This document shows positions 1,517 to 58,659 of a DNA stretch of 64,000 nt, piece after piece (within the stretch, counting starts at the first letter, position 1; each line of letters opens with the position of its first letter). The notes under the pieces were generated by a model. It was given only the letters and a program-made list of their open reading frames with translations. It did not search any database and was not told the origin of the DNA. A program made the position numbers and the translations under genes. The stretch spans positions 164,300,001 through 164,364,000 of the forward strand of contig NC_086102.1 of NCBI RefSeq assembly GCF_963921235.1. The letters are read 5' to 3'. Origin of the DNA: Mobula hypostoma. Lineage: Eukaryota.

Positions 1517-1656
1517 AAACAAGAAAATCTGCAGCTGCTGGAAGTCCAAGCAACACACACAAGATGCCGGAGGAACTCAGTAGGTCAGGCAGCATCTATG
1601 GGAAGAGAGTAAACCATCAACTATTCAGACCAAGACCCTTCATCAGGAAAACTGGA
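1517..1656 (-). mobile_element. Short Penelope terminal derivative (degenerate hammerhead)
   Basis: aagaaaatctgcag.tgctgg...gcagcatct...gacccttcatcagg family sequence. Confidence 0.75.
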
Positions 1657-7900: not shown

Positions 7901-9845
7901 TGCCCTTTTTGTTTTTTCTCCCCTTCCTTCAATAACTCTGGTTAAGTTTACATTCATAGATATACTTTCTTTATAATTGTATGCAGTGTACGATTGGTTA
8001 TTTCTTGCTGACAGGTGATTGCATGGGGCAGTAAATCACACAGTATTCACACAAACCTTGGTTGGGTGGGCAAGACATCCCAACCTCACAGGTTTGGTGG
8101 GACCCAAGTCATATCTACCCTCGACGTATGGAGTCTAAGTTTTCTCAATGCCGAGTCCAGTGGCTGTTTGCGAGGGGCTAACAAGCCGCATTGCTAGAGA
8201 TGCCCAGTATAAAGGAGTTTCACTTATTATTACTTTCTCCATATTTGCTCCCCATCTGCTAACTATTTTTATTTCAAGTTTCTAGAATCTGCATTTTTGT
8301 TGCTTTTCAACTGTAACAAGATCGATAGTGCTAATGGTTACCAGTCTAGATAAGAATAAAATTAGAATGCCAGTACATATTTCTATCAGAATCATGATGG
8401 CAGAATTCTTGAAAATGTTCAAAACGCTTTGCTGCTGAATGTATTGGATAAATATTGCTACATGAGTAGGTATGCTAGAAGAACTTCAATCTAATAATTC
8501 TCAATGCATCTTGGGCTCCAGTTGCAACCAAATTTCCCTGAAATTCATCATAAATTTAAGCATCTTTAAACTAAATTTGATAGTAAACAAAACTGCAAGA
8601 TTTTTAATTCTGAAGATTTTATCTATTTTCTAGGATCTGCATTATGAAAGTTACCACGGGATTTCTAATCCTGCTTTCAACAAATCCAAGAAACATTCTT
8701 AATTTCTTATGGATCTATTAGCAGCCAAGCGCAAGTAGACCAATAAATTGATATTTATAGACTGTTGTTTTGACTTATTAGATCACACTAAGTGGTATCA
8801 TTACATGCCACTTTCAATTAACCACATTACGAGCAAGCAACATTAAATATAGAAAGTGCATTTCCAGTCCAATATTATGAGCTAACTAAATGCCAATGAT
8901 ATTTTATAACAATTAATTTACTTATCTTTCAATAATTGTATTTATATATAAATTGTCTCTATTTTCACTCTGATCAAACACAAAGCAAAAATAAACAGCC
9001 TCAAACTACAAATTGGATTAACAGCAATGCACTGGCACCCAGTTTAGTGATACTCCTTAATGGGGTGATTACTGTTGTACTTGATCTTTCAGTCCATTAC
9101 TCACAATTGCACATTGCAATAATGCCATCTACTCAATCAGTGCACTGTGATGTTGTGAACCCAGCACAAGCCACTGTCTTCCTTGCTGCTGCTTTGTCCT
9201 ACATTTAGTGGTTTTCAACCAAACACAGCAACTTTGAACAGGAGAGAATGCAGGAAGCATTCATTCAGTCAGTCCACAAAGGCACCAGCCACTGGTAACC
9301 CCAGCACTGCAGCAAGCACTCATCATGCCAGCCGTGGCACAGTCCCTGAGCCATGCATCGCAGGAGTGAGTACAGTAGTTGCACAACTCTGCAAACTAGC
9401 CTAACATAAGCCCTCAGCCCCTGTACATTGCCATAGTGCAAGTTATCGTTCTTAATGGCTCCCTTCAACTGAACAGAGTAATGTGTCATTGCACACATAT
9501 CTAAGGCCAGCACAAGGATATTCTGTAGCTGATAATAATCACTAGAGAATTCCAGACCTGGTGGATAATGCATTTTCCTCAGAATGATGGAAGAGATTTG
9601 TTTAAAAAAAATGTATTGTGTTTTTCTCAGGATCTTTTCTATAGTTTTCTAAAATTAATGCACGTGACAAAAAAAATGGCAGATCTCAGTTGCAACTTGC
9701 ATAATTAACCAGTGCGTGTGCAAACTGTAAATAGAAACACTCACTGAGAGGTCCTTGATTATTTTGTCCATATTATTTTCTAATTCCAATGCTATTAGCT
9801 TAAAATTCCAGAGTTTACCTTGGTAGACAAAGTCCCACTATTACA

Positions 9846-10034
9846 CACACAAAAAAAAACGCTGAAGGAACTCAGTAGGTCAGGCAGCATCTAGGACTGG
9901 AGTCCTAATGAGGGGTCTTAGCCCAAAATGGCAACTCTTTATTCCACTCCATAGATGCTGCCTGACCTGCTAAATTCCACCAGCAGTTTGTGTGAGAGAC
10001 TCTGGATTTCCAGCATCTGCAGAATCTCTTGTGG
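9846..10034. mobile_element. Fold-back Penelope terminal derivative with 12-bp TSD
   Basis: Inverted arms (aggtcaggcagcatcta / tagatgctgcctgacct); flanks cccactattaca (9834-9845) and cccattattaca (10035-10046). Confidence 0.8.
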
Positions 10035-13000: not shown

Positions 13001-14087
13001 TCAAGTGCAAGCCAGCCTTGATTGGTATTATGTATTGTAAAAGGATTGACAGGTAAAGACAACAAAAAAATTGAGCATAAAAGTAATAACAGTCACGAGA
13101 AAGAATTTATAATAGGGAACAAAGCTTTCTCTACTTGAGGTATTGATTACAAGAGTAGACAGTTTGGTCAGACTTCAGTTGGGATATTGCTTGAAGTTCT
13201 GGCCACCAGTTTAAGGAGAATATTAAAACTGATAGAGAGGGCATAGAGAGCTTGCACAAGGATGTTGCCTGAGATGGACTGTTTCAGTTATGAGGACAGA
13301 CTAGGTCTGTATTTCATGGAGCAGAGGGGATTAAGAAGGAACAAGATGAGGATTATAGACAAGATAAACTACAGAAAACTTCCCAAGAGGAAGAAAACGT
13401 AAATTTTAAGTAAAGGGCATGAAATTTGGAGGGGATCTGAGGGGTCTTGGAATTTACCGCCCAAGAGAGTGATAGAAACAAGAGTTGCTGGCATCACTGA
13501 AAAATCCAAACAAGTATTTGAATTACCTAGACATTGAAGGCTATGCTCCAAGTACTAGAAGATGGGGTTAATACAGATAGGTGTCCACTGGTTAGCATGG
13601 ATGTTTCAGGTCAAGCAGCCGGTTTCCATACTAGATGACTATAAAAGAAATAGCATCCCAATTAACAAATACTGTGGGTCAACTGTATCTTCACAAAGAA
13701 GGGCACAAATAAAGTTCCAGAAATGCTGGGAACCCAGAATCTGTTTAAAAGAAAAAGAAAGTAGGGAAAAAGCATTAGGAAAATTAATAGGATTGTATGC
13801 TGATAAATCCACAAGGCCCATAGTATGTACCTGTTAGTGAATAAAATGCTGGCGTCCATTATTAAAGACAATAATGGAATAGAGAAAGAATAGGGAAATC
13901 ATGCTTGACAACTTTACTGAATTGTTTTGAAGATGGATTGGAGAGATTTGATGGATATGATGTTTTTGAACTTCTTTTTAAAACAAGAGCCCAGAAAGAG
14001 CCAAGTTGTTTAAAAATAAAGCACATGAATCTGGGCCAGTGTGCTGTTGTGGGTCATGCCTCGTTACAGTCTGGAAGCAGAAGAAAT

Positions 14088-15594
14088 GTTGGCTTTGTGG
14101 AACAATCCATGTTCCAAACCTATTCTGGTATCTGTCCCCCACTTTTCCTTTGCTACATCGACGACTGCATTGGCGCTGCTTCCTGCACCCATGCTGAGCT
14201 CGTTGACTTCATTAACTTTGCCTCCAACTTTCACCCTGCCCTCAAGTTTACCTGGTCCATTTCCGACACCTCCCTCCCCTTTCTAGATCTTTCTGTCTCT
14301 TTCTCTGGCGACAGCTTATCTACTGATGTCTACTATAAGCCTACTGACTCTCACAGCTATCTGGACTATTCCTCTTCTCACCCTGTCTCTTGCAAAAATG
14401 CTATCCCCTTCTCGCAATTCCTCCGTCTCCGCCGCATCTGCTCTCAGGATGAGGCTTTTCATTCCAGGACGAAGGAGATGTCTTCCTTTTTTAAAGAAAG
14501 GGGCTTCCCTTCCTCCACCATCAACTCTGCTCTCAAATGCATCTCCCCCATTTCAAGCACATCTGCTCTCACTCCATCCTCCCACCACCCCACTAGGAAT
14601 AGAGTTCCCCTCATCCTCACCTACCACCCCACCAGCCTCCGGGTCCAACATATAATTCTCCGTCACTTCCGCCACCTCCAATGGGATCCCACCACTAAGC
14701 ACATCTTTCCCTCCCCCCCCGCTTTCCGCAGGGATCGCTCCCTACGCAACTCCCTTGTTCATTCGTTTCCCCGCCCCCCCATCCCTCCCCACCAATCTCC
14801 CTCCTGGCACTTATCCTTGCAAGTGGAACAAGTGCTACACATGCCCTTACACATCCTCCCTCACTAGCATTCAGGGCCCCAGAGAGTCCTTCCACATGAG
14901 GCGACACTTCACCTGTGAGTCAGCTGGGGGTGATATACTGCATCCGGTGATCCCGATGCAGCCTTCCATATATTGGCAGACTGGGAGATCATTTCGCTGA
15001 ACTGCCAGAGAAAGCAGGATCTCCCAGTGGCCACACATTTTAATTCCACGTCCCATTCCCATTCTGATATGTCTATTCACAGCCTCCTCTACTGTAAAGA
15101 TGAAGCCACACTCAGGTTGGAGGAACAACACCTTATATTCCGTCTGGGTAGCCTCCAACCTGATGGCGTGAACATTGACTTCTCAAACTTCCACTAATGC
15201 CCCGCCTCCCCCTTGTACCCCATCCGTTATTTATTTATATACACAAATTCTTTCTCTCTCTCTCTCCTTTTTCTCCCTCTGTCCTTCTCACTATACCCCT
15301 TGCCCATCCTCTAGGTTCCCCCCTCCTCCTTTCTTTCTCCCTAGGCCTCCCGTCCCATGATCCTCTCATATCCCTTTTGCCAATCAACTGTCCAGCTCTT
15401 GGCTCCATCCCTCCCCCTCCCGTCTTCTCCTATCATTTCGGATCTCCCCCTCCCCCTCCCACTTTCAAATCTCTTCCCAGCTCTTCTCTCAGTTAGTCCT
15501 GACGAAGGATCTTGGCCCGAAACGTCGACTGTACCTCTTCCTAGAGATGCTGCCTGGCCTGCTGTGTTCACCAGCAACTTTTATGTGTGTTGTT
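14088..15594 (+). mobile_element. Penelope-like retroelement, 5'-truncated (RT, GIY-YIG endonuclease, terminal repeat)
   Basis: ORF with CYIDDCIG, LPFLDL and VYYKPTDSHSYLDYSSSHP; frameshifted GIY-YIG region (VIYCIR..C..YIG); pyrimidine-rich 3' region with hammerhead; agaagaaat repeated at 14079-14087 and 15595-15603 (possible TSD). Inserted in a CR1 relic. Confidence 0.92.
15495..15530 (+). ncRNA. Minimal type I hammerhead ribozyme motif in the Penelope 3' terminal repeat (best-preserved copy)
   Basis: agtc CTGACGA a ggat-cttg-gccc GAAA cg TC gact: full catalytic core, stem I agtc/gact, stem II with one mismatch, palindromic ACGT stem III. Confidence 0.75.
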
Positions 15595-16629
15595 AGAAGA
15601 AATAAATAGGTCCTTTATCTTAATAGTAAACAATGACTAGTGCTTTTTGCAGGATTTAGTTGGACCCCAGCTGTTTCAGTTGAGAAAAGTAAATGTAACA
15701 TCTTAAGCTTTACAGACAACACAATATGTGAGTGGGAATTTATCTGTGAGGAAACTGCAGGTTTTCAGAGTCATTTGGATGGATTGAGAGAGTGGCTAAG
15801 TGCATGGCAGATAAAGTACAGTACAATGATGATAATTGTGGGATTATCTACTCCAGGTGGCAAAATTTTGAGGCAGATTATTATTCAAATTGTAATAGAT
15901 TCGGAGAAAGTAGAGTAGGAGATCCTGGACATACTCATACACCAGTTAACAAGAGCAAACATGATGTGCAGCAGGTGCTTAAAAAGGTAGTAAAATATTG
16001 ACCTTTATAGTGAGAGAGGCTGAACAAGGATGTCTTGGTGAGAATATTGTGTGCTTCTTTGATCTCCTTGTCTGAGGAAAAATGTTTTGGCAGTAGGGAA
16101 GTGCAACAAAGTATCATCAGATTCATTACTGGATTAACAGCGTTAACAGAAGAAATTTTGAAACAACTTGACTCTTGGATACTGGAATTCAGAAAAGCAG
16201 GAGGGGTTTCATTGAAGCTTATAATACCCTGCCAGGACAAAATAGAACTAGATATAAAGTGCCTTGAAAAAGTATTTAGCCTCCACAACTATTTTTTCTC
16301 ATTTTACTTTTTTTTAAAAATGTAAAATATATTGAAGTAGGATTCTTGAGCTAACCTACAAAACATGGTGCATCATGTCAAATCAAAAGAAAAAAAACTA
16401 AAACCTGTCAATAAGTTACTAAAATTAAGAAAACAAAATTGTGAGGCAGATAATGTATTCTTCCCTTTTGTAATTACTATACCAACTTTCCTCAGGTGCA
16501 ATATACTAACTCGCCCAATTTATTGATGTAGAAAATTGGAGGATCGCCCGTTTTCAATGAAATCATAAAAATAAATATTCCCTTTCTCTGTAAGGTCCAA
16601 CAGTATGGCAGATTTTCACAAACCAAACC

Positions 16630-17130: not shown

Positions 17131-17557
17131 GCAACACACATCAAAGTTGCTGGTGAACGCAGCAGGCCAAGCAGCATCTATAGGAAGAGGCGCAGTCGAT
17201 GTTTCAGGCCGAGACCCTTCGTCAGGACTAACTGAAGGAAGAGTGAGTAAGGGATTTGAAAGCTGGAGGGGGAGGGGGAGGGGGAAATGCAAAATGATAG
17301 GAGAAGACAGGAGGGGGAGGGATGGAGCCGAGAGCTGGACAGGTGATAGGCAAAAGGGGATACGAGAGGATCATGGGACAGGAGGTCCGGGAAGAAAGAC
17401 GGGGGGGGGTGACCCAGAGGATGGGCAAGAGGTATATTCAGAGGGACAGAGGGAGAAAAAGGAGAGTGAGAGAAAGAATGTGTGCATAAAAATGAGTAAC
17501 AGATGGGGTACGAGGGGGAGGTGGGGCCTAGCGGAAGTTAGAGAAGTCAATGTTCAT
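17131..17557 (-). mobile_element. Penelope-like element 3' fragment, same family as 14088-15594
   Basis: Close reverse complement of ~15170-15592, including the hammerhead. Confidence 0.9.
17194..17229 (-). ncRNA. Hammerhead ribozyme motif (Penelope copy)
   Basis: Reverse complement agtc CTGACGA a gggt-ctcg-gcct GAAA ca TC gact; core intact, stem III palindrome mutated. Confidence 0.65.
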
Positions 17558-18103
17558 GAGGAAGGGTTTTGAATAGAAAGCAAGAAGTGAGAAAAATTTA
17601 AACGCAAACAACAGGAATTCTGCAGATGCTGGAAATTCAAGCAACACATATTGTTCTCAGCTTAACAGAATGTGATTGATGGGTACAGCAAGGGCTAATG
17701 CTGACACCTCACCTTTGAATTGCTGAAGGTCAACATGGAGGTGAAGAAAGCAATTTAACAGGGAAACAGTATGATAACCATTACTATGAGACTATTTAAA
17801 TACAGGAGTAAGAAAGTCTTATTGAAATTGTATAGCGCTTTGGCGAGAACACACCTGGAGTACTGTGTACAATTTTGATCTCCTTACCTGAAAAGAGGAT
17901 ATAGCTGCCACAGAGTGCAGCAAATATTAACTAGACTGCCTCCTGGGATGGAGGATTTGCTGTAAAAGGATAAATTGAACGGACTGACCTGCCTGTGAGA
18001 GGAGACCTTATCAAAACTTACAAAATTCTTAAAGGTCTTTACAGATAAGAAGAACGATCTTTCCCCGATTGCGGATTCTACAATCAGGAAGCACCATTTA
18101 GGG

Positions 18104-18183: not shown

Positions 18184-19850
18184 ATTTAGGATACAGAACA
18201 GACCATTTAAAACAGAGGTAGTCTCTCAGAAACATTTGAAATTCTCTAACCACAAGTCTTTGTAGGCTTAATCATCATGTTCACTTAAAACATGGATTGA
18301 TAAACTTCTGGACATGAAGGAAATCAAAGGATATGGGAATAACATTGGAAAATGGCAGTGTAGATGATCAGCCATCTTAAGACTCAAAACTCCGGTAATT
18401 TGATAAATTGGTTTATTATTGTCATATGTTTGAGGGACAGAGAAAAACTTGGTTTTGCATGCCAACCATAGAGATCATTTTATCACTTCGAGCTGCCAGC
18501 ACAAGTGGCAGATGCCATTTTGATTTCAATGCTTAAGAGCAGTTTAGACTGGTACATGGATGGGAGAGATGGACAGCTATGGTCCAGGTGCAGGTTGATG
18601 GGACAAGGCAGTTTAAATAGTTCGGTATGAACTGGATGGGCCGAAAGGCCTGTTTCTGTGCTGTAGATTTCTATAACATCGGTGCATCAAGGCAGTAACA
18701 GAATGCAGAATGGTGTTACAGTTACTGTTGGGATTCTCAAGGAGGCGCTCATGGAGTGAGGTTGTTTTTGGCTTCGTTCCATTACCGTTACTTTTTTTTA
18801 AACTTATGATCTCCCTTACTTAATTTATTTTTACCTACACTAGAAGATTTATTCTATACTACTGATTTTTCCTTGAAATGTAACTGAGAAATCTGAAGAA
18901 GTGAGCAAAGAAATAGGTACAAGATCTAGAGGGCGTGAACCTATCAGGAAATATCACAATAGTTCATCACAATATAACTGGTCAAGGGCAATTTACCCAG
19001 ATATTTACAATTCATCATCATTATGTGCCACGTCATATGACATAGGTGACCATAGTGACCATGAATATTCTTGGCAATTTTTTTTCCATAGAAGTGATTT
19101 ACAATTGTTTTCTTCTGGGCAGTGTCATTACAAGACACTTGACCCCAGCCATTATCAATACTCTTCAGATTGTCTGTCTGGCATCAGTGGTCACATAACC
19201 AGGACTTATGAGCAGTCAGTGCATATCACATGACCATGCACCACCTGAAGATCTTTAAGCTTGTTCCAGCAATGAGGTATTCTGCCAAGCAACTTGACAG
19301 TCTGCTCAGGGAGTTGCTGAACAGAATTCATCACATTTGTCCCGAACATCCGGCAACTTGACCATTTTTTCTGAAAAGACCATCCCATCCCACAGCATGA
19401 ACATAACTCTTAATTTTGAGAGTAGCTCAATAGTGCCACAACAGTGTTCCACACACCAGGGACCTGGATTCAATTCTGTGTCTGGATCTGCGTGCTTTAG
19501 TTTCCATGCAGGTCAGTTGGCTAAATGGCCATCCTATATGGTCTTGTGCACAGAATCTGGAAGGAATTGACAAGGATGTGAGGAGTATAAAAATGCGATT
19601 AATTTGGATTACTGTGAATAGATAATTGATGGTCAGTGCTGACTTAGTGGGGTGCATGAATCTAATTTGTTCTCAATTACACCGAAAACTCTGCTCTGGG
19701 GCCAAAAGTGTAGAAAGTAACTAAACATCTCACTATACACAGCAGTTTAACCACCAAGGATATCTGCCCAATGTACCACAGTCACATTCCTTCCCACCTT
19801 TAGTATTATCTACTGGAGGCATTGCTTCATGAAGGCAACATCTATCAAAG

Positions 19851-20032
19851 CAACACATACAAAATGCTGGAGGATCTCAGCAGGCCAGGCAGCATCTACG
19901 GAAAAAGTACAGTCGACGTTTGGCCCAAAACATCAACTGTACTTTTTCCATAGATGCTGCCTGGCCTGCTGAGTTCCTCCAACATTTTGTGTGTTGCTCG
20001 GATTTCCAACATCTGCAAATTTTCTCGTTTGT
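19851..20032. mobile_element. Fold-back Penelope terminal derivative with 15-bp TSD
   Basis: ~70-bp inverted arms; caacatctatcaaag at 19836-19850 and 20033-20047; interrupts a Rex1-type 3' relic. Confidence 0.88.
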
Positions 20033-21022: not shown

Positions 21023-21216
21023 AGCTTTATATCTGATTTATGTTGTTCTTGTGAATGCTGCTTATCTGATGCTATGTACCTGTGACACTGTTGCAAACAG
21101 GCTTTGCATTGGATTTGTCAAAACATGTACTTGTGTATATGACAATGACATCTTTGCTTCATCCTGATAAATGCAGGGGATTGTAGGCGATTCTATATCC
21201 ATATAACTGAAGTACT

Positions 21217-21357
21217 CACGAGGAAATCTGCAGATGCTGGAAAATCAAGCAACATGCACAAAATGCTGGTGGAACACAGCAGGCCAGACAGCATCCATAG
21301 GAAGAAGCATGGTCGACATTTCGGGCTGAGACCCTTCATCAGGACTCAGGGTATGTG
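21217..21357 (-). mobile_element. Short Penelope terminal derivative with 13-bp TSD
   Basis: taactgaagtact at 21204-21216 and 21358-21370; truncated just past the hammerhead. Confidence 0.85.
21311..21346 (-). ncRNA. Hammerhead ribozyme motif (short Penelope derivative)
   Basis: Reverse complement agtc CTGATGA a gggt-ctca-gccc GAAA tg TC gacc. Confidence 0.6.
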
Positions 21358-22329
21358 TAACTGAAGTACTTTCTGGTTTGCATAATAAATACAATGCTAT
21401 TGTTTATATAAAATAATCACATTTTCTGGCAAATTAACAAATATCAATTTTGAAAAAAAGATTGTGAAAAATTTTATCCACAAGTAATTGCACCTTCACA
21501 AATACAATTGTTCAGAAATGTAAGAACTTTTGAGGCTCTGAAATAAACACTGCAAAAAAAATTATAAAAGGTCACTACAGACTATCAACTCATTGATGAG
21601 TTTTTTTTCCTATTTCAAACTTCATTATAAACATCAAGTTCATCATTTGAAATACGACCAAGGTAAGGATGTCTAAGTATAGAATGTTTAAATAACATTC
21701 AACAAGGTGGTCTGCAAGCTCTCAACACATTAAAAACAAGAAGCCTTCTCAAAACAGATTAAAGATTGGTTTGCACCATAACAATCAAACAAAACTTTAG
21801 TTGGGATGAAAACAGATTAGGGTCGAACTCAATATAAGTGATTGTGGTGTATTAAGCAAAATGCGTTTCTGTAGTATGAAGATACTTTTATACCATCTTC
21901 AAAAAGGACGAGAATCACAATTAACAAAGCAATCACTGCTCGAGTACAACTACATATAAAACATAGAAAAAGGCCAATCACGTGTCAATGTAATACAGAT
22001 GTACAATGAGCACACTAGCACTTTAAATTAAAGGAAAATTACAACAAATTGGTCTAAACAATTCTCTACGCCCACACCCTCGCTTTTTAAAGCACCGCAT
22101 CACCTCCTGTTACTACCCTGCATCAGGTGATACGCTATCATGCTTCAAGATACAGAAAATAAGCAGTTCCCCCCTCTGCAGTTTACTCTCACTTCCCAGC
22201 CCTGAGGCCACCCTCAATACTCCCTCCCGATGCAAGCGCACGTTCACAGCTGCGGCTCTTGTCGATGCATTTAAACAGGCAAGAGGTGTCGCCAATAACT
22301 GGAGTGTGGAGACCCATAACAGCTTCCCG

Positions 22330-43871: not shown

Positions 43872-44098
43872 CAAACAAGAGGAAATCAGCAGATGCTGGA
43901 AATCCAAGAAACACACACAAAATGCTGGAGGAACTCAGCAGGCCAAGCAGCATCTATTGAAAAAAGTACAGTCAATGTTTCAGGCCGAGACCCTTCCTGC
44001 AGTCCTGCCGAAGGCTTTCGGCCCAAAATGTCGATTTTACTTTTTTTTTCCCATAGATGCTGCTTGGCCTGCTGAGTTCCTCCAGCATTCTGTGTGCG
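43872..44098. mobile_element. Fold-back Penelope terminal derivative with 16-bp TSD
   Basis: ttatttaatgaagcaa at 43856-43871 and 44099-44114; inverted arms meet at hammerhead relics. Confidence 0.88.
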
Positions 44099-44639
44099 TT
44101 ATTTAATGAAGCAATTTGAAGTACAATATTGTTAGTATAGATTTAAAATGAGACTCTGAATTTCTTTGTTTTGAAGAAGTGAGATGCCAGGTGGACTCTA
44201 GTGAACTAAGGTGTTAAAACATTTGGAAGGTGAGGCACTTACAAAAGCTCACTGCATGAATGAAGATTGTTAGATCTTAGAGTATAGTATTAGGACCACC
44301 ATTCTTAAATTTCCACAGTTTTGCATTTAAAAGCACAGTGCAAATTATTAATCAGCTTTCAACTTCCTCCATTGTTTTATCCATAGAGATTGTTATTTTA
44401 AGATCTTATGCAAGGGTGGGGGGAGGTAAGGTTTCAACCATCAGAAACTAAATTTAATGCAAAAATCAAGAAGATGTATTTTCCATAAAGATGTTCAAAA
44501 ATAGCTGTGAGAAAGGAGGAGTATCTTAATAGGGTCTGTGCTCAAGTACCCAAATGTATTGCAAAAGCATTAAGAAGAATTAAAAACTAAATCAAAAAGA
44601 TGAAGTAATCAGAAGTCACCGGAAATCGATAACATGTCA

Positions 44640-49724: not shown

Positions 49725-50750
49725 ACCAGAAACACTGCAGATGCTGGAAATCTGTAGTGACACACAAAATGCTAGAGGAACTCAGTGCCTCAGACTGCAC
49801 CTATGGAGGGAAATGGAGTTGATGTTTTGGGTTGAGGACTCTTCTTTGAACTGGAAAGAAAGTGGAGCCAGTATAAGTGGTTTGGGGGAGAAGATGGGCC
49901 AAGTGCTGGTGGTAATAGGTGAATCCAGACAGGAAGGGGAAGATAAGCAGCTGTGGGATGTAGGAATGAGGTAAGAAGCTTGGAAATGATATGTGGAAGT
50001 GACAGAGGGCTGAAGAAGATGAAATCCCACAGAAGAGGACAGTGGATCATCAAATAAAGGGAAGAAGGTGAGGAGAGGAGCTGGCTGGAGTAATGTGTGA
50101 GTGATGAGCAGATTGAGAGGGCAGGGAAGGAGAAAGAGAAGGGGTATAAGGGCCTCATTGGAATCACTTTCCATTTCACACCATCTTCAGTGTCCTTTGT
50201 ATCCAGGCATAACAGGGATAGAGTTCCCCTTGTCCTCACCTACTGTTTCTCGGGCCTCTGTATCTACATATTATTCTTCACAACTTCTGTTATTTCAAAC
50301 TTGATCCCATCACCAAGCATATCTTCCTCTTCCTTATCTCCACTTTCTGCAGGGGTACACTCTCTGTGACTCATTTGTCTGCTCATCCCTTCCACTGATT
50401 TCTCCCTCCAGGCACATAGCCCTGCAACTGTGTTAAGTGTTACTCCTGCCCCAATCAGTCCCCTAAATGGTCTTTCCACATTAGACAGTTCTTCACTTGT
50501 GAATCCATCAGTAACATTTATTGCATCTGATGCTCCAGTGCAGCCTCCTCTATATCAGTGAGACCGAGCACAGATTGAGGGATGACTTCATCAAGCGTCT
50601 TTGCCCTGTTTCCACTTCCCATTCCCATACTAATATGACTGATGCAATTTCCTCTACTGCCAAGTTGAGGCCAGATGCAGATTAAGGGAATATCACCTTG
50701 TACTCTACCCTGGTAGTCTTCAACCTGGTGGCATAGACATCAATTTCTAC
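49725..50750. mobile_element. Older Penelope-like element, inverted arrangement (terminal part on minus, RT C-terminus/GIY-YIG relic on plus)
   Basis: RHNRDRVPLVLTY and atttattgcatc...ctcctctatatcagtgagacc match the 14-15 kb copy; 49725-50160 is the reversed terminal region. Confidence 0.8.
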
Positions 50751-51359
50751 CCCCCCCCCAACCTGTCCCTTCTGTTCCTCCCCCCACCCCAATGTTCCAT
50801 TGTTTTCCCTTACACCTGCCATATTTACCCAATTTCCCCTAGGGATCAATAAAGTATGTCTATCTATCTATCGATCTATCTATCTATTTTTAATGTGTTT
50901 TTTGCATGTATAAAACTTGTTTCTGTTTTGAGGTGGTACTTTTGAAATTTTGTGACTTTGAGTTCTGTATAGTCCACGTTTAATGGATCCTGCTGGGATT
51001 CTTAAATGCAGAAGGTAGTAGTAGATCTGGGATATTTTTCAGATATTTAACTCTTAATGAAAATGAACTTTTTTCATATGTGGTGATAAGGTCAGTGACC
51101 TGAATTGTTAACCGTTTCATTCTTCAATGCTGCCTGACTTCTTGAATATTTCCATTATTTTCTGTTTCTATTTCAGAATTCAGCATCTGTTACTTTTGCT
51201 TTTTGATTGATTGGTCTGGGCAACAGGAATGCTAGAAAATGTATCTTTTGCTAAAAAATATATGCTTCGTTCTTCTACGTACAGTTGGTGACATTGTTGA
51301 CCATTGTTTTACCAGCTCCCAAAATTCCTAGTATATAAAGGCCTCGTATATGCAGATCT

Positions 51360-57849: not shown

Positions 57850-58072
57850 CGCAAACAAGAGAAAATCTGTAGATGCTGGAAATCCAAGTAGTGCACACAA
57901 TGTTGGATGAACTCAGCAGGCTGGGCAGCATCTATGGAAAAGAGTATAGACGACGTTTTGGGCCGAGACCCTTCAAGTCCTGATGAAAGGTCTTGGCCCA
58001 AAATGTCGTCTTTACTCTTTTCCATAGATGTTGCCCAGCCTGCTGAGTTCCTCCAGCATTTTGTCTGTGTTG
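57850..58072. mobile_element. Fold-back Penelope terminal derivative with 13-bp TSD
   Basis: tttgtgttctgag at 57837-57849 and 58073-58085; inverted arms; agtcCTGATGA...ccAAAAtgTC relic at 57976-58010. Confidence 0.88.
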
Positions 58073-58659
58073 TTTGTGTTCTGAGATCAAGGTTGAGTAA
58101 TTTCAGAAAGTTCCCAAAGATGCTCCAATCCATTGAAATGTGCTGCTAATTCCTATATCCTGAAAATTTAAAAAAACACTCATTGCTGCCCAATGGTGTG
58201 CTTTTATTCTTTATATAATTTTTGTCATACCTGGATTCTGAAGTTATTTTCTTTAAACTTCTTTGGTCTTCCTTTATTCCTATTGTCTGCTGAAAAAATT
58301 TCCAATTTTAGAAGTGCAGCTCCCTTTTTTAAAAAAAGTAGAGTCAGCAATTGAATGGGTAACCAGGAAACATTGCTTTACGTAAGACTTATTTGAACCT
58401 GTAATTTTTTTTATTGGAAGTGGTTAACAGACTATTATGTTCCTAAAAAGTAATTGTAGGTGAAGAAAGAAGGCAGTTAAGAGAGAACTATGTGTGCTAA
58501 TGGTAGGGTGCCAATCAGAATCCAAAACTAATACCTAGTTTTCTCATAAGAAATAGGAATCTATTGATCCTTGTTTCTTTACCTATTTACTGGTTATATT
58601 TTCAGAGTCTGCTTGTCAGAGGTTTCTGAAGATTCAAATTTTTTTTTAATTCTAAAAAA

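What the first reader, a model, noticed from the sequence alone, without database searches (positions are those of the whole stretch)
15495..15530. Very minimal hammerhead ribozyme at the 3' end of a Penelope retroelement
Seen: AGUC-CUGACGA-A-GGAU(CUUG)GCCC-GAAA-CG-UC^GACU, i.e. all conserved hammerhead core bases (CUGANGA, GAAA, UH) with stem I (agtc/gact) and stem II. Family consensus from the 17.2 and 21.3 kb copies gives stem II as GGGU-CUCG-GCCC. Only 2 nt separate A15.1 and U16.1, so stem III cannot close in a monomer, but ACGU is self-complementary. Established: Penelope-like elements carry minimal type I hammerheads, some acting as dimers, and an extra A after A9 is tolerated in natural hammerheads. 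Inference: an obligately dimeric ribozyme that would process tandem or read-through element transcripts.
Basis: partly seen in the sequence, partly recalled or inferred. Interest (0 to 1): 0.85.

Follow-up and report, generated by a model that had tools for sequence, protein, structure and literature searches.

The report
Known Penelope-element minimal hammerhead, decayed copy
This 36-base stretch is a real but ordinary copy of the minimal hammerhead ribozyme motif that Penelope-like retrotransposons carry near their 3' end, here inside a truncated, frameshifted element of what is probably a ray genome. The motif class and its dimer model were published in 2014.

Summary
Window 15495-15530 (+) holds every conserved hammerhead core base, a 4-5 bp helix I, a helix II, an extra A after A9, and only CG between A15.1 and U16.1.

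It lies 297 nt after the stop of a broken RT/GIY-YIG ORF and 66 nt before the 3' end of a 1.5-kb, 5'-truncated Penelope-like element (14088-15594). A 9-bp target duplication flanks that element.

The same architecture sits downstream of distantly related PLE ORFs in 8 of 9 loci fetched from other assemblies. The core and the CG are retained there, while helices I and II differ and covary.

This is the "min-HHR" of metazoan PLEs described by Cervera and de la Pena in 2014 (PMC4209133): no helix III, an unpaired base between 9 and 10.1, G10.1-C11.1, palindromic 15.2-16.2 and a dimer model.

This copy is probably inert. A G-to-A change breaks helix II, no intact same-strand partner is nearby, and the host element is dead. 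Cleavage could not be tested, because only assembled contigs were available.

The scan holds about 310 notes on the same family elsewhere in this genome. Verdict: real, correctly read, already known, low interest.

The parts
14079..14087 (+). 5' copy of the 9-bp target-site duplication AGAAGAAAT
   Evidence: It is the longest shared word between the two flanks. It abuts the first residue of real protein homology at 14088.
14088..15197 (+). 5'-truncated, frameshifted PLE ORF remnant: RT from just before YIDD, linker, CCHH and GIY-YIG nuclease; stop codon at 15195-15197
   Evidence: ORF pieces are listed. tblastn with batoid and other PLE fragments shows one long match with the GIY..YIG block out of frame between about 14800 and 14980. 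Homologues carry RVT_1, HTH_animal and GIY-YIG.
15198..15494 (+). CT-rich 3' untranslated region (pseudo-LTR equivalent)
   Evidence: Read directly. Many contigs of other subfamilies stop matching just upstream of 15495 (loose ends).
15495..15498 (+). helix I, 5' strand (positions 2.4-2.1)
   Evidence: It covaries with 15527-15530 across PLE families.
15499..15505 (+). core box C3 U4 G5 A6 C7 G8 A9
   Evidence: All positions except N7 are invariant in alignment A1.
15506..15506 (+). unpaired A between A9 and G10.1
   Evidence: A one-base bulge (A, or U in one case) is present in every family found. It is a published hallmark of the class (PMC4209133).
15507..15518 (+). helix II and loop 2; this copy has A at 15509 (A.C mismatch) and T at 15513
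   Evidence: The family majority is G at 15509 and C at 15513.
15519..15522 (+). core box G12 A13 A14 A15.1
   Evidence: Invariant in alignment A1.
15523..15524 (+). C15.2 and G16.2, the only bases between A15.1 and U16.1, making ACGU self-complementary
   Evidence: CG is found at this place in all eight motifs downstream of a PLE ORF in L002-L009.
15525..15526 (+). U16.1 and C17; the predicted cut is after 15526
   Evidence: by homology to the hammerhead consensus. Cleavage was not tested.
15527..15530 (+). helix I, 3' strand (positions 1.1-1.4)
15531..15594 (+). 3' terminal segment of the element, short form without the optional ~30-nt tail extension
   Evidence: Hundreds of contigs diverge after 15592. 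The 3' copy of the target duplication starts at 15595.
15595..15603 (+). 3' copy of the 9-bp target-site duplication
17194..17229 (-). sister copy of the motif in a shorter 5'-truncated PLE; core intact, C11.1 changed to U, ACGU changed to ACAU
   Evidence: 50 bits. A PLE C-terminal match lies at 17525-17388.
21311..21346 (-). copy of the motif with intact core, AUGU in place of ACGU and a 3-bp helix I, inside a 141-bp insertion (21217-21357) with a perfect 13-bp target duplication
57976..58011 (+). decayed copy (G12 changed to A) forming the long arm of a fold-back insertion
   Evidence: 25 bits.
44001..44036 (+). decayed copy (core CTGCCGA, G12 changed to A) forming the long arm of a fold-back insertion
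9901..9936 (+). decayed copy (G5 changed to A, G12 changed to A) next to an inverted arm
1614..1649 (-). decayed copy

Best explanation
The stretch is one decayed copy of the minimal type I hammerhead motif (min-HHR), a standard part of the 3' region (pseudo-LTR) of endonuclease-encoding Penelope-like elements (PLEs).

Shown here:
- All catalytic-core bases are present, with helices I and II and one unpaired base after A9.
- There is no helix III; only a self-complementary ACGU stands in its place.
- The motif lies 297 nt after the RT/GIY-YIG ORF stop and 66 nt before the element's 3' end.
- The same plan, with covarying helices, follows other PLE ORFs.

Taken from the literature, for active master copies: two motifs, on a tandem or read-through transcript or on two transcripts, pair through ACGU and swap helix I strands. 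This builds a double hammerhead that cuts after GUC. The reaction is weak on its own and is probably helped by the element's own protein. The proposed role is processing of multimeric element RNA.

Inferred for this copy: it is inert.
- G10.3 changed to A leaves helix II with two G-C pairs before an A.C mismatch.
- No intact same-strand partner lies nearby. The nearest plus-strand copies, at 9.9 and 19.9 kb, are a mutated core and a fragment.
- The host element is 5'-truncated and frameshifted.
For: Motif and statistics:
- The sequence is as described.
- The gapped pattern matches once, against 0 of 100 shuffles.
- About 13 family copies lie in the window.

The host element is a PLE:
- ORF pieces carry YIDD, CCHH and a GIY-YIG remnant.
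- 787 homologues were found. The best are Mobula hypostoma at 88% and Hypanus sabinus at 83-87% identity, with RVT_1, HTH_animal and GIY-YIG domains.
- tblastn mapping shows frameshifts.
- A 9-bp target duplication abuts both ends.

Family letters and ends:
- Majority G at 15509 and C at 15513.
- Apart from the loop-2 positions 15511-15513 and a minor C>T at 15529, the listed variable sites inside the motif are CpG transitions.
- The element ends at about 15592.

Cross-family test:
- A covariance model built from 8 sequences finds the motif 26-254 nt after the ORF stop in 8 of 9 loci whose PLE proteins are about 45-55% identical to the window's.
- The core columns are invariant.
- 83% of cells are paired, against 20-42% when the 3' partner is slid.
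- 8 of 12 pairs change on both sides in A1, and 9 of 10 in A2.

Literature:
- PMC4209133 defines this class and the dimer model.
- PMC6765202 summarises the dimer cleavage work.
- PMC11167929 shows protein-assisted cleavage with C3G/G8C rescue, and an internal RT start downstream of the motif.
Against: - No Rfam hammerhead model matches, either at gathering score on the whole window or at E up to 10 on 15400-15650. This is expected for a motif without helix III.
- No cleavage evidence exists for this family. All sequencing runs found were served as contigs, which cannot show RNA ends.
- Nearest-neighbour folding does not favour the double hammerhead: -9.1 kcal/mol against a dimer minimum of -24.3 for this copy. 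In 5 of the 7 natural sequences folded it predicts a monomer hairpin that pairs G5-G8 with C15.2-C17.
- In Anolis the motif was not needed for insertion in vitro and no RNA-seq read ends were seen at the cut site.
Confidence: 0.9

Rival explanations
1. The conserved module is kept mainly as a structured RNA handle for the element's RT/EN protein, or as a regulatory hairpin. Self-cleavage would be marginal or irrelevant to transposition.
For: - Dimeric min-HHRs have low in vitro activity (PMC4209133).
- In PAc the catalytic mutants do not change insertion in vitro, cleavage needs the protein, and no RNA-seq ends sit at the cut site.
- The predicted monomer minimum is an extended hairpin that buries the core and the cut site.
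- Copies with U4 changed to C occur in two different families, L006 and both arms of L009.
Against: - The invariant positions across families are exactly the catalytic bases of the hammerhead, while the helices are free to change in pairs. A mere protein handle would not need that pattern.
- The C3G/G8C rescue in PAc shows true ribozyme chemistry.
- PLEs of fungi and plants carry fully canonical, active hammerheads.
Confidence: 0.2
2. This particular copy is itself an active or exapted ribozyme acting on a host transcript.
For: It is the only copy in the window with every core base and ACGU intact.
Against: - The A.C mismatch in helix II is private to this copy (94-98% of family depth has G).
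- No intact partner lies on the same strand within the window.
- It is flanked by a dead ORF.
- It differs from the family majority at many neutral-looking sites.
Confidence: 0.03
3. Chance resemblance to a hammerhead in repeat DNA.
For: The motif is short, and Rfam models do not score it.
Against: - 0 of 100 shuffles give a match.
- The descriptor scan gave no hit outside the family's copies in the window and the motifs beside PLE ORF fragments in the loci.
- Helices covary across families.
Confidence: 0.01

Closest known systems
min-HHR of metazoan Penelope-like elements (Cervera and de la Pena 2014, PMC4209133)
   Same: Type I topology; no helix III or loop 3; palindromic 15.2-16.2; one unpaired base between A9 and G10.1; G10.1-C11.1; helix I of 4-5 bp with no defined loop 1; location in the PLE terminal repeat region; many dispersed truncated copies; pairs of motifs on opposite strands; dimer model.
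   Different: Nothing structural. Helix II is 4 bp here against the 7-8 bp of the Schistosoma families. The host appears to be a batoid fish, a group not named in the parts of that paper read here.
Hammerhead of the Anolis Poseidon element PAc (Frangieh et al. 2024, PMC11167929)
   Same: A PLE hammerhead with helices I and II only. It lies a short way upstream of the internal reverse-transcription start that defines the element's 3' end: about 85-92 nt there, 66 nt here. An optional 30-40 nt tail follows.
   Different: In PAc the ORF start codon lies inside the motif, and activity was measured (protein-assisted, C3G/G8C rescue). Here nothing was measured and the position of the ORF start is unknown.
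Canonical type I hammerheads of newt satellite 2, Schistosoma Sm-alpha and animal non-LTR retrozymes
   Same: Same core, with a weak helix III that forces double-hammerhead (dimer) cleavage of tandem transcripts (Forster 1988 as cited; PMC7229834).
   Different: Those keep a 1-2 bp helix III with a 2-4 nt loop and loop-loop tertiary contacts between helices I and II. Here helix III is reduced to A15.1/U16.1 with two bases between them, and loop 1 is undefined.
HDV-like ribozymes of R2 and L1Tc retrotransposons
   Same: A small self-cleaving RNA built into a retrotransposon and proposed to free element RNA from co-transcripts.
   Different: An unrelated fold, located at the element's 5' end, and active as a monomer.

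Membership tests
Hammerhead ribozyme, type I | Core boxes C3-U4-G5-A6-N7-G8-A9 and G12-A13-A14 | tested here: met
   Positions 15499-15505 and 15519-15521. Invariant across families.
Hammerhead ribozyme, type I | A15.1/U16.1 followed by H17 at the cut site | tested here: met
   A at 15522, U at 15525, C at 15526.
Hammerhead ribozyme, type I | Helix I formed by the sequences flanking the motif | tested here: met
   AGUC/GACU plus one U.G. Five of six helix I pairs change on both sides across families.
Hammerhead ribozyme, type I | Helix II closed by G10.1-C11.1 | tested here: met
   G15507-C15518 is present. The third pair is an A.C mismatch in this copy only; the family majority restores G-C.
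Hammerhead ribozyme, type I | A closed helix III | tested here: not met
   Only two bases lie between A15.1 and U16.1. No Rfam hammerhead model scores the stretch.
Hammerhead ribozyme, type I | Site-specific self-cleavage | not testable with these tools
   Only contigs were available, so no read ends can be seen.
PLE min-HHR (Cervera and de la Pena 2014) | No helix III or loop 3; 15.2-16.2 palindromic | tested here: met
   CG at 15523-24. CG also stands there in all eight motifs downstream of a PLE ORF in L002-L009.
PLE min-HHR (Cervera and de la Pena 2014) | One unpaired base between positions 9 and 10.1 | tested here: met
   A at 15506. A one-base bulge is present in all families found.
PLE min-HHR (Cervera and de la Pena 2014) | Lies in the terminal repeat or 3' region of a PLE | tested here: met
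   It lies 297 nt after the RT/GIY-YIG stop and 66 nt before the element's end. In 8 of 9 other loci the motif lies 26-254 nt after the ORF stop.
PLE min-HHR (Cervera and de la Pena 2014) | Consensus families with compensatory changes in the helices | tested here: met
   Helix I solutions include AGUC/GACU, AUACCA/UGGUAU, UACUA/UAGUA, GCU/AGC and CUUC/GAAG.
PLE min-HHR (Cervera and de la Pena 2014) | Cleavage only as a dimer | not testable with these tools
   Secondary-structure energies neither support nor exclude it.
Endonuclease-encoding Penelope-like element | Single ORF with an RT followed by a C-terminal GIY-YIG nuclease | tested here: met
   The window ORF remnant aligns to P0081 (GIY-YIG 27.7 bits, plus a weak RVT_1 match), P0052 (RVT_1 30.8 bits) and P0001. 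The copy is truncated at 14088 and frameshifted.
Endonuclease-encoding Penelope-like element | 5' truncation, optional 30-40 nt tail at one end, adjacent inverted 5'-truncated copies | tested here: met
   Truncation and target duplication. Tail extension on exactly one arm of four fold-backs, and at the 5' side of the 17.2-kb copy. Inverted copies in L002 and L008. Description of these features: PMC8557442.
Endonuclease-encoding Penelope-like element | Tandem arrangement giving a pseudo-LTR upstream of the ORF | tested here: not met
   The 15.5-kb copy is a solitary 5'-truncated insertion, and no tandem PLE lies in the window.

The most novel reading that the evidence does not exclude
In these rays the roughly 100-140 nt block made of the minimal hammerhead plus the 3' terminal segment may be a mobile unit in its own right. 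It would be a ribozyme-bearing, SINE-like parasite of the PLE machinery, with the hammerhead hairpin marking the 5' limit of the copied RNA. It would not be just the residue of random 5' truncation.

Hints:
- A 141-bp insertion with a perfect 13-bp target duplication begins 11 nt before the motif.
- Three fold-back insertions have a long arm that starts at or within a few bases of helix I.
- Hundreds of contigs in four organisms stop matching at 15495-15497.

The plain alternative fits the same data: other PLE subfamilies share only this module, and some copies are extreme truncations.
Probability: 0.25. Interest if true: 0.35.

Novelty: already known. Interest (0 to 1): 0.12.

Why it matters
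It matters little beyond annotation. It confirms that the huge Penelope-derived repeat family of this probable ray genome carries the standard minimal hammerhead. It also gives a small covariance model that finds such motifs where the Rfam hammerhead models do not.

The open question in the field is whether these minimal hammerheads cleave in vivo and what that does for transposition. This copy does not bring that question closer to an answer, because it is a mutated relic and no raw RNA reads were available.

Tried and rejected
- Rfam gave no hit, either at gathering score on the whole window or at E up to 10 on 15400-15650. The only outputs were chance matches in the CT-rich UTR: mir-483 (E 0.17), SMAD5-AS1 and HOTTIP.
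- My first fixed-spacing pattern was one base too long and found nothing. It was corrected.
- Pfam run directly on the window's ORF pieces found nothing useful. Domain identity had to come from homologues.
- One look-up in an NCBI shark genome returned no DNA.
- Both sequencing-run searches returned only Logan contigs, with no holder on record as RNA apart from three metagenome/metatranscriptome runs holding about 5% of the sampled words. Read ends at the cut site could therefore not be examined.
- Within-family conservation is not informative about selection. Listed variable sites in the tail are about as sparse as in the motif, and the variant table was cut at 40 rows.
- RNAcofold does not recover the double hammerhead as the minimum. 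Nearest-neighbour energies ignore core tertiary contacts, so this was not used against the model.
- Lunse et al. 2017 (PMC5785218) is not held and is cited only through the review PMC6765202.
- A 5' limit of the element at about 14010, suggested by two tblastn hits, was rejected. The alignment upstream of 14088 has almost no identities.
- L001 showed no motif by pattern or by model.

Full report
**The observation**

- AGTC at 15495-98.
- CTGACGA at 15499-505.
- A single A at 15506.
- GGAT / CTTG / GCCC at 15507-18.
- GAAA at 15519-22.
- CG at 15523-24.
- TC at 15525-26.
- GACT at 15527-30 (positions confirmed by script).

Every conserved hammerhead core base is present. Helix I has four Watson-Crick pairs plus a possible U.G. 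Helix II is G-C, G-C, A.C, U.G. Only two bases separate A15.1 from U16.1, so no intramolecular helix III can close, and ACGU is self-complementary.

A gapped pattern (CTGANGA, 8-30 bases, GAAACGTC) matches once in the window and never in 100 dinucleotide-preserving shuffles. My first fixed-spacing pattern was mis-counted and found nothing.

No Rfam family reaches its gathering score anywhere in the window. No hammerhead model appears even at E up to 10 on 15400-15650. That is expected for a motif lacking helix III.

**The host element**

ORF pieces on the plus strand upstream carry a YIDD reverse-transcriptase motif, a cysteine/histidine cluster, and the C-terminal part of a GIY-YIG nuclease ending at a stop at 15195-97.

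Pfam on these pieces found nothing directly. A protein search with 14100-14867 returned 787 relatives.
- The best are uncharacterised proteins of the rays Mobula hypostoma (88% identity) and Hypanus sabinus (83-87%).
- Precomputed domains are RVT_1, HTH_animal and GIY-YIG.
- Re-scanning confirmed GIY-YIG in P0081 (27.7 bits, above the cut-off) and RVT_1 in P0052 (30.8 bits).

tblastn of these proteins onto the window gives one long match from 14088 to about 15197. The GIY..YIG block is out of frame between about 14800 and 14980. Upstream of 14088 the alignment has almost no identities.

A 9-bp word, AGAAGAAAT, occurs at 14079-87 and again at 15595-603. It abuts both the start of homology and the element's end, so I read it as the target-site duplication.

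The host is therefore a 1.5-kb, 5'-truncated, frameshifted Penelope-like element (PLE). The motif starts 297 nt after its stop codon, and the predicted cut lies 66 nt before its 3' end. The genome is probably that of a myliobatiform ray. This is an inference from similarity of a transposon protein only.

**The family**

The 3' half of the motif recurs eight times in the window within three mismatches, against 0.04 expected. A sensitive blastn finds about 13 units.

Most copies are ruined by CpG decay (G12 to A, C15.2 to U, G16.2 to A).
- The minus-strand copy starting at 17229 has an intact core, but C11.1 is U and ACGU has become ACAU.
- The minus-strand copy starting at 21346 has an intact core, with AUGU and a 3-bp helix I.
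- Only the 15.5-kb copy keeps every core base and ACGU. It alone has A at 15509.

Contigs were laid from four runs of uncertain type (guessed RNA, possibly DNA) and from four genomic runs of four coded organisms (two on record as probable DNA, two of unrecorded type). The family is enormous and shared between species.
- G at 15509 holds 94-98% of depth, and C at 15513 holds 72-83%.
- Apart from the loop-2 positions 15511-15513 and a minor C>T at 15529, the other listed variable sites inside the motif are CpG transitions of roughly 6-14% each. C15518 to T reaches 39%.
- Hundreds of contigs diverge after 15592, which marks the 3' end.
- Hundreds also diverge just before 15495-15497.

The variant table was cut at 40 rows, and listed variable sites in the tail are about as sparse as in the motif. 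Within-family conservation therefore says nothing about selection.

I fetched nine loci from other assemblies that encode PLE fragments about 45-55% identical to the window's protein.

A pattern scan and then a covariance model built from eight sequences find the same motif 26-254 nt after the ORF stop in eight of the nine loci.
- All eight keep the one unpaired base, G10.1-C11.1, and GAAA-CG-U followed by C or U.
- Six read CUGAYGA. L006 and L009 read CCGACGA (U4 to C).
- Helices I and II differ. Helix I is AGUC/GACU here, AUACCA/UGGUAU in L002, UACUA/UAGUA in L003, GCU/AGC in L004, L005, L006 and L008, and CUUC/GAAG in L009.

Pair counting on the MAFFT alignment gives:
- 83% of cells paired, against 20-42% when the 3' partners are slid;
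- 8 of 12 pairs with changes on both sides;
- no shuffle out of 500 reaching the observed covariation score.

The 24-sequence model-fitted alignment gives 80% paired and 9 of 10 pairs changed on both sides. That alignment leans towards the model. The core columns are invariant.

**Comparison with what is known**

Cervera and de la Pena (2014, PMC4209133) defined a "min-HHR" with no helix III or loop 3 and searched for it on the reasoning that two copies could build helix III between them. They found it in the terminal repeats of all PLEs examined, including fish, coelacanth, frog and reptile elements. They list as emergent hallmarks:
- families full of compensatory changes;
- the G10.1-C11.1 pair;
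- the palindromic nature of 15.2-16.2.

They also report a short helix I of 4-5 bp, mostly solitary truncated copies, pairs of motifs on opposite strands, no cleavage by single motifs, and weak cleavage by dimers or trimers.

A review (PMC6765202) summarises the dimer work, including Lunse et al. 2017, which I could not read.

Frangieh et al. (2024, PMC11167929) showed for an Anolis PLE that:
- the motif cleaves only in the presence of the element's protein;
- C3G and G8C abolish cleavage and the double mutant partly restores it;
- cleavage is not needed for insertion in vitro;
- no RNA-seq reads end at the cut site;
- reverse transcription starts internally at two adjacent sites some 85-92 nt downstream of the cut, which explains the optional 30-40 nt tail.

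The window's anatomy fits. The short-form end lies 66 nt after the cut, and a roughly 30-nt extension (containing TTCCAGCATCTGCAG) is present in some copies.

**Mechanism**

- Shown: the anatomy, the association with PLEs, and the covariation.
- From the literature: double-hammerhead formation through ACGU and swapped helix I strands, weak intrinsic activity, and help from the protein.
- Inferred for this copy: no activity. Helix II has a private A.C mismatch. The nearest plus-strand copies, at 9.9 and 19.9 kb, are a mutated core and a fragment. The element is dead.

ViennaRNA does not favour the double hammerhead: -9.1 kcal/mol against a dimer minimum of -24.3 for this copy, and -27.5 against -39.5 for the intact L002 motif. 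In five of the seven natural sequences folded it predicts a monomer hairpin in which G5-A6-Y7-G8 pair with C15.2-G16.2-U16.1-C17. That could be an off state. It may equally be an artefact of energy rules that ignore the tertiary structure of the core. I report it only as a lead.

**What else is there**

- The 21.3-kb copy is a 141-bp insertion (21217-21357, minus strand) bounded by a perfect 13-bp duplication. It consists of 11 nt, the motif, the 3' segment and the tail.
- Four fold-back insertions (9.9, 19.9, 44.0 and 58.0 kb) each carry the tail extension on exactly one arm. The 17.2-kb copy has a tail-like 33-mer at its 5' side.
- L008 and L002 show inverted 5'-truncated copies of 155 bp (100% identical) and 862 bp.
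- These are the inverted-repeat and one-sided-tail signatures described for PLEs (PMC8557442). They agree with priming on both DNA strands.

**Verdict**

The interpretation agrees with the published model but was not tested, and this copy is probably inert. The kind is already known, and the scan holds about 310 notes with the same words in this genome. Interest is low.

Noticed in passing
window 21204-21370 (minus strand): A 141-bp insertion (21217-21357) consists of 11 nt, the minimal hammerhead, the PLE 3' segment and the tail. It is flanked by a perfect 13-bp direct repeat, AGTACTTCAGTTA. It is either an extreme 5' truncation or a tiny non-autonomous unit.
   Followed up: partly
window 9845-10023, 19848-20022, 43881-44107, 57863-58076: Four fold-back (head-to-head) insertions of the motif plus 3' segment. 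In each, only one arm carries the ~30-nt tail extension. The inner junction lies inside or at the 5' edge of the hammerhead: at GGCC in helix II at 19.9 kb, and between G8 of the short arm and the start of helix I of the long arm at 44.0 and 58.0 kb. The two arms of the 58-kb insertion share private variants, for example GTCGTC.
   Followed up: partly
window 17614-17646 (minus strand): A 33-nt copy of the tail extension sits at the 5' side of the 17.2-kb truncated PLE, whose own 3' end lacks it. [quoted passage not shown]
   Followed up: no
window 15495-15497: In contigs of four organisms, hundreds of records stop matching exactly at the first bases of helix I. Those ending at 15495 have a CT-rich upstream consensus, like the copy starting at 49852 and so another subfamily's UTR. 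Those ending at 15496-97 have AT-rich, random-looking flanks.
   Followed up: partly
window 50094-50789 (plus strand): Another, older PLE ORF remnant (35-56% identity to ray PLE fragments, several frames). A decayed motif copy lies on the opposite strand at about 49735-49856.
   Followed up: no
L006:3759-3806 and L009:3993-4040 / 1805-1852: Motifs of two different helix I families both read CCGACGA (U4 changed to C). In L009 this holds on both arms of one insertion. They may be dead copies or a tolerated core variant.
   Followed up: no
window 15489-15536 and L002-L004 motifs: In five of seven natural sequences the predicted monomer minimum-energy fold extends helix I by pairing G5-G8 with C15.2-C17, burying the cut site. 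N7 is a pyrimidine in all families seen, which permits this pairing. It is a possible off state.
   Followed up: partly
window 15547 onward and the 21.3-kb copy: An ATG 20 nt after the predicted cut opens a frame that stays open through the 3' segment and tail in the copies read by eye. In Anolis PAc the ORF start lies inside the motif. Whether this ATG is the family's ORF start was not checked.
   Followed up: no
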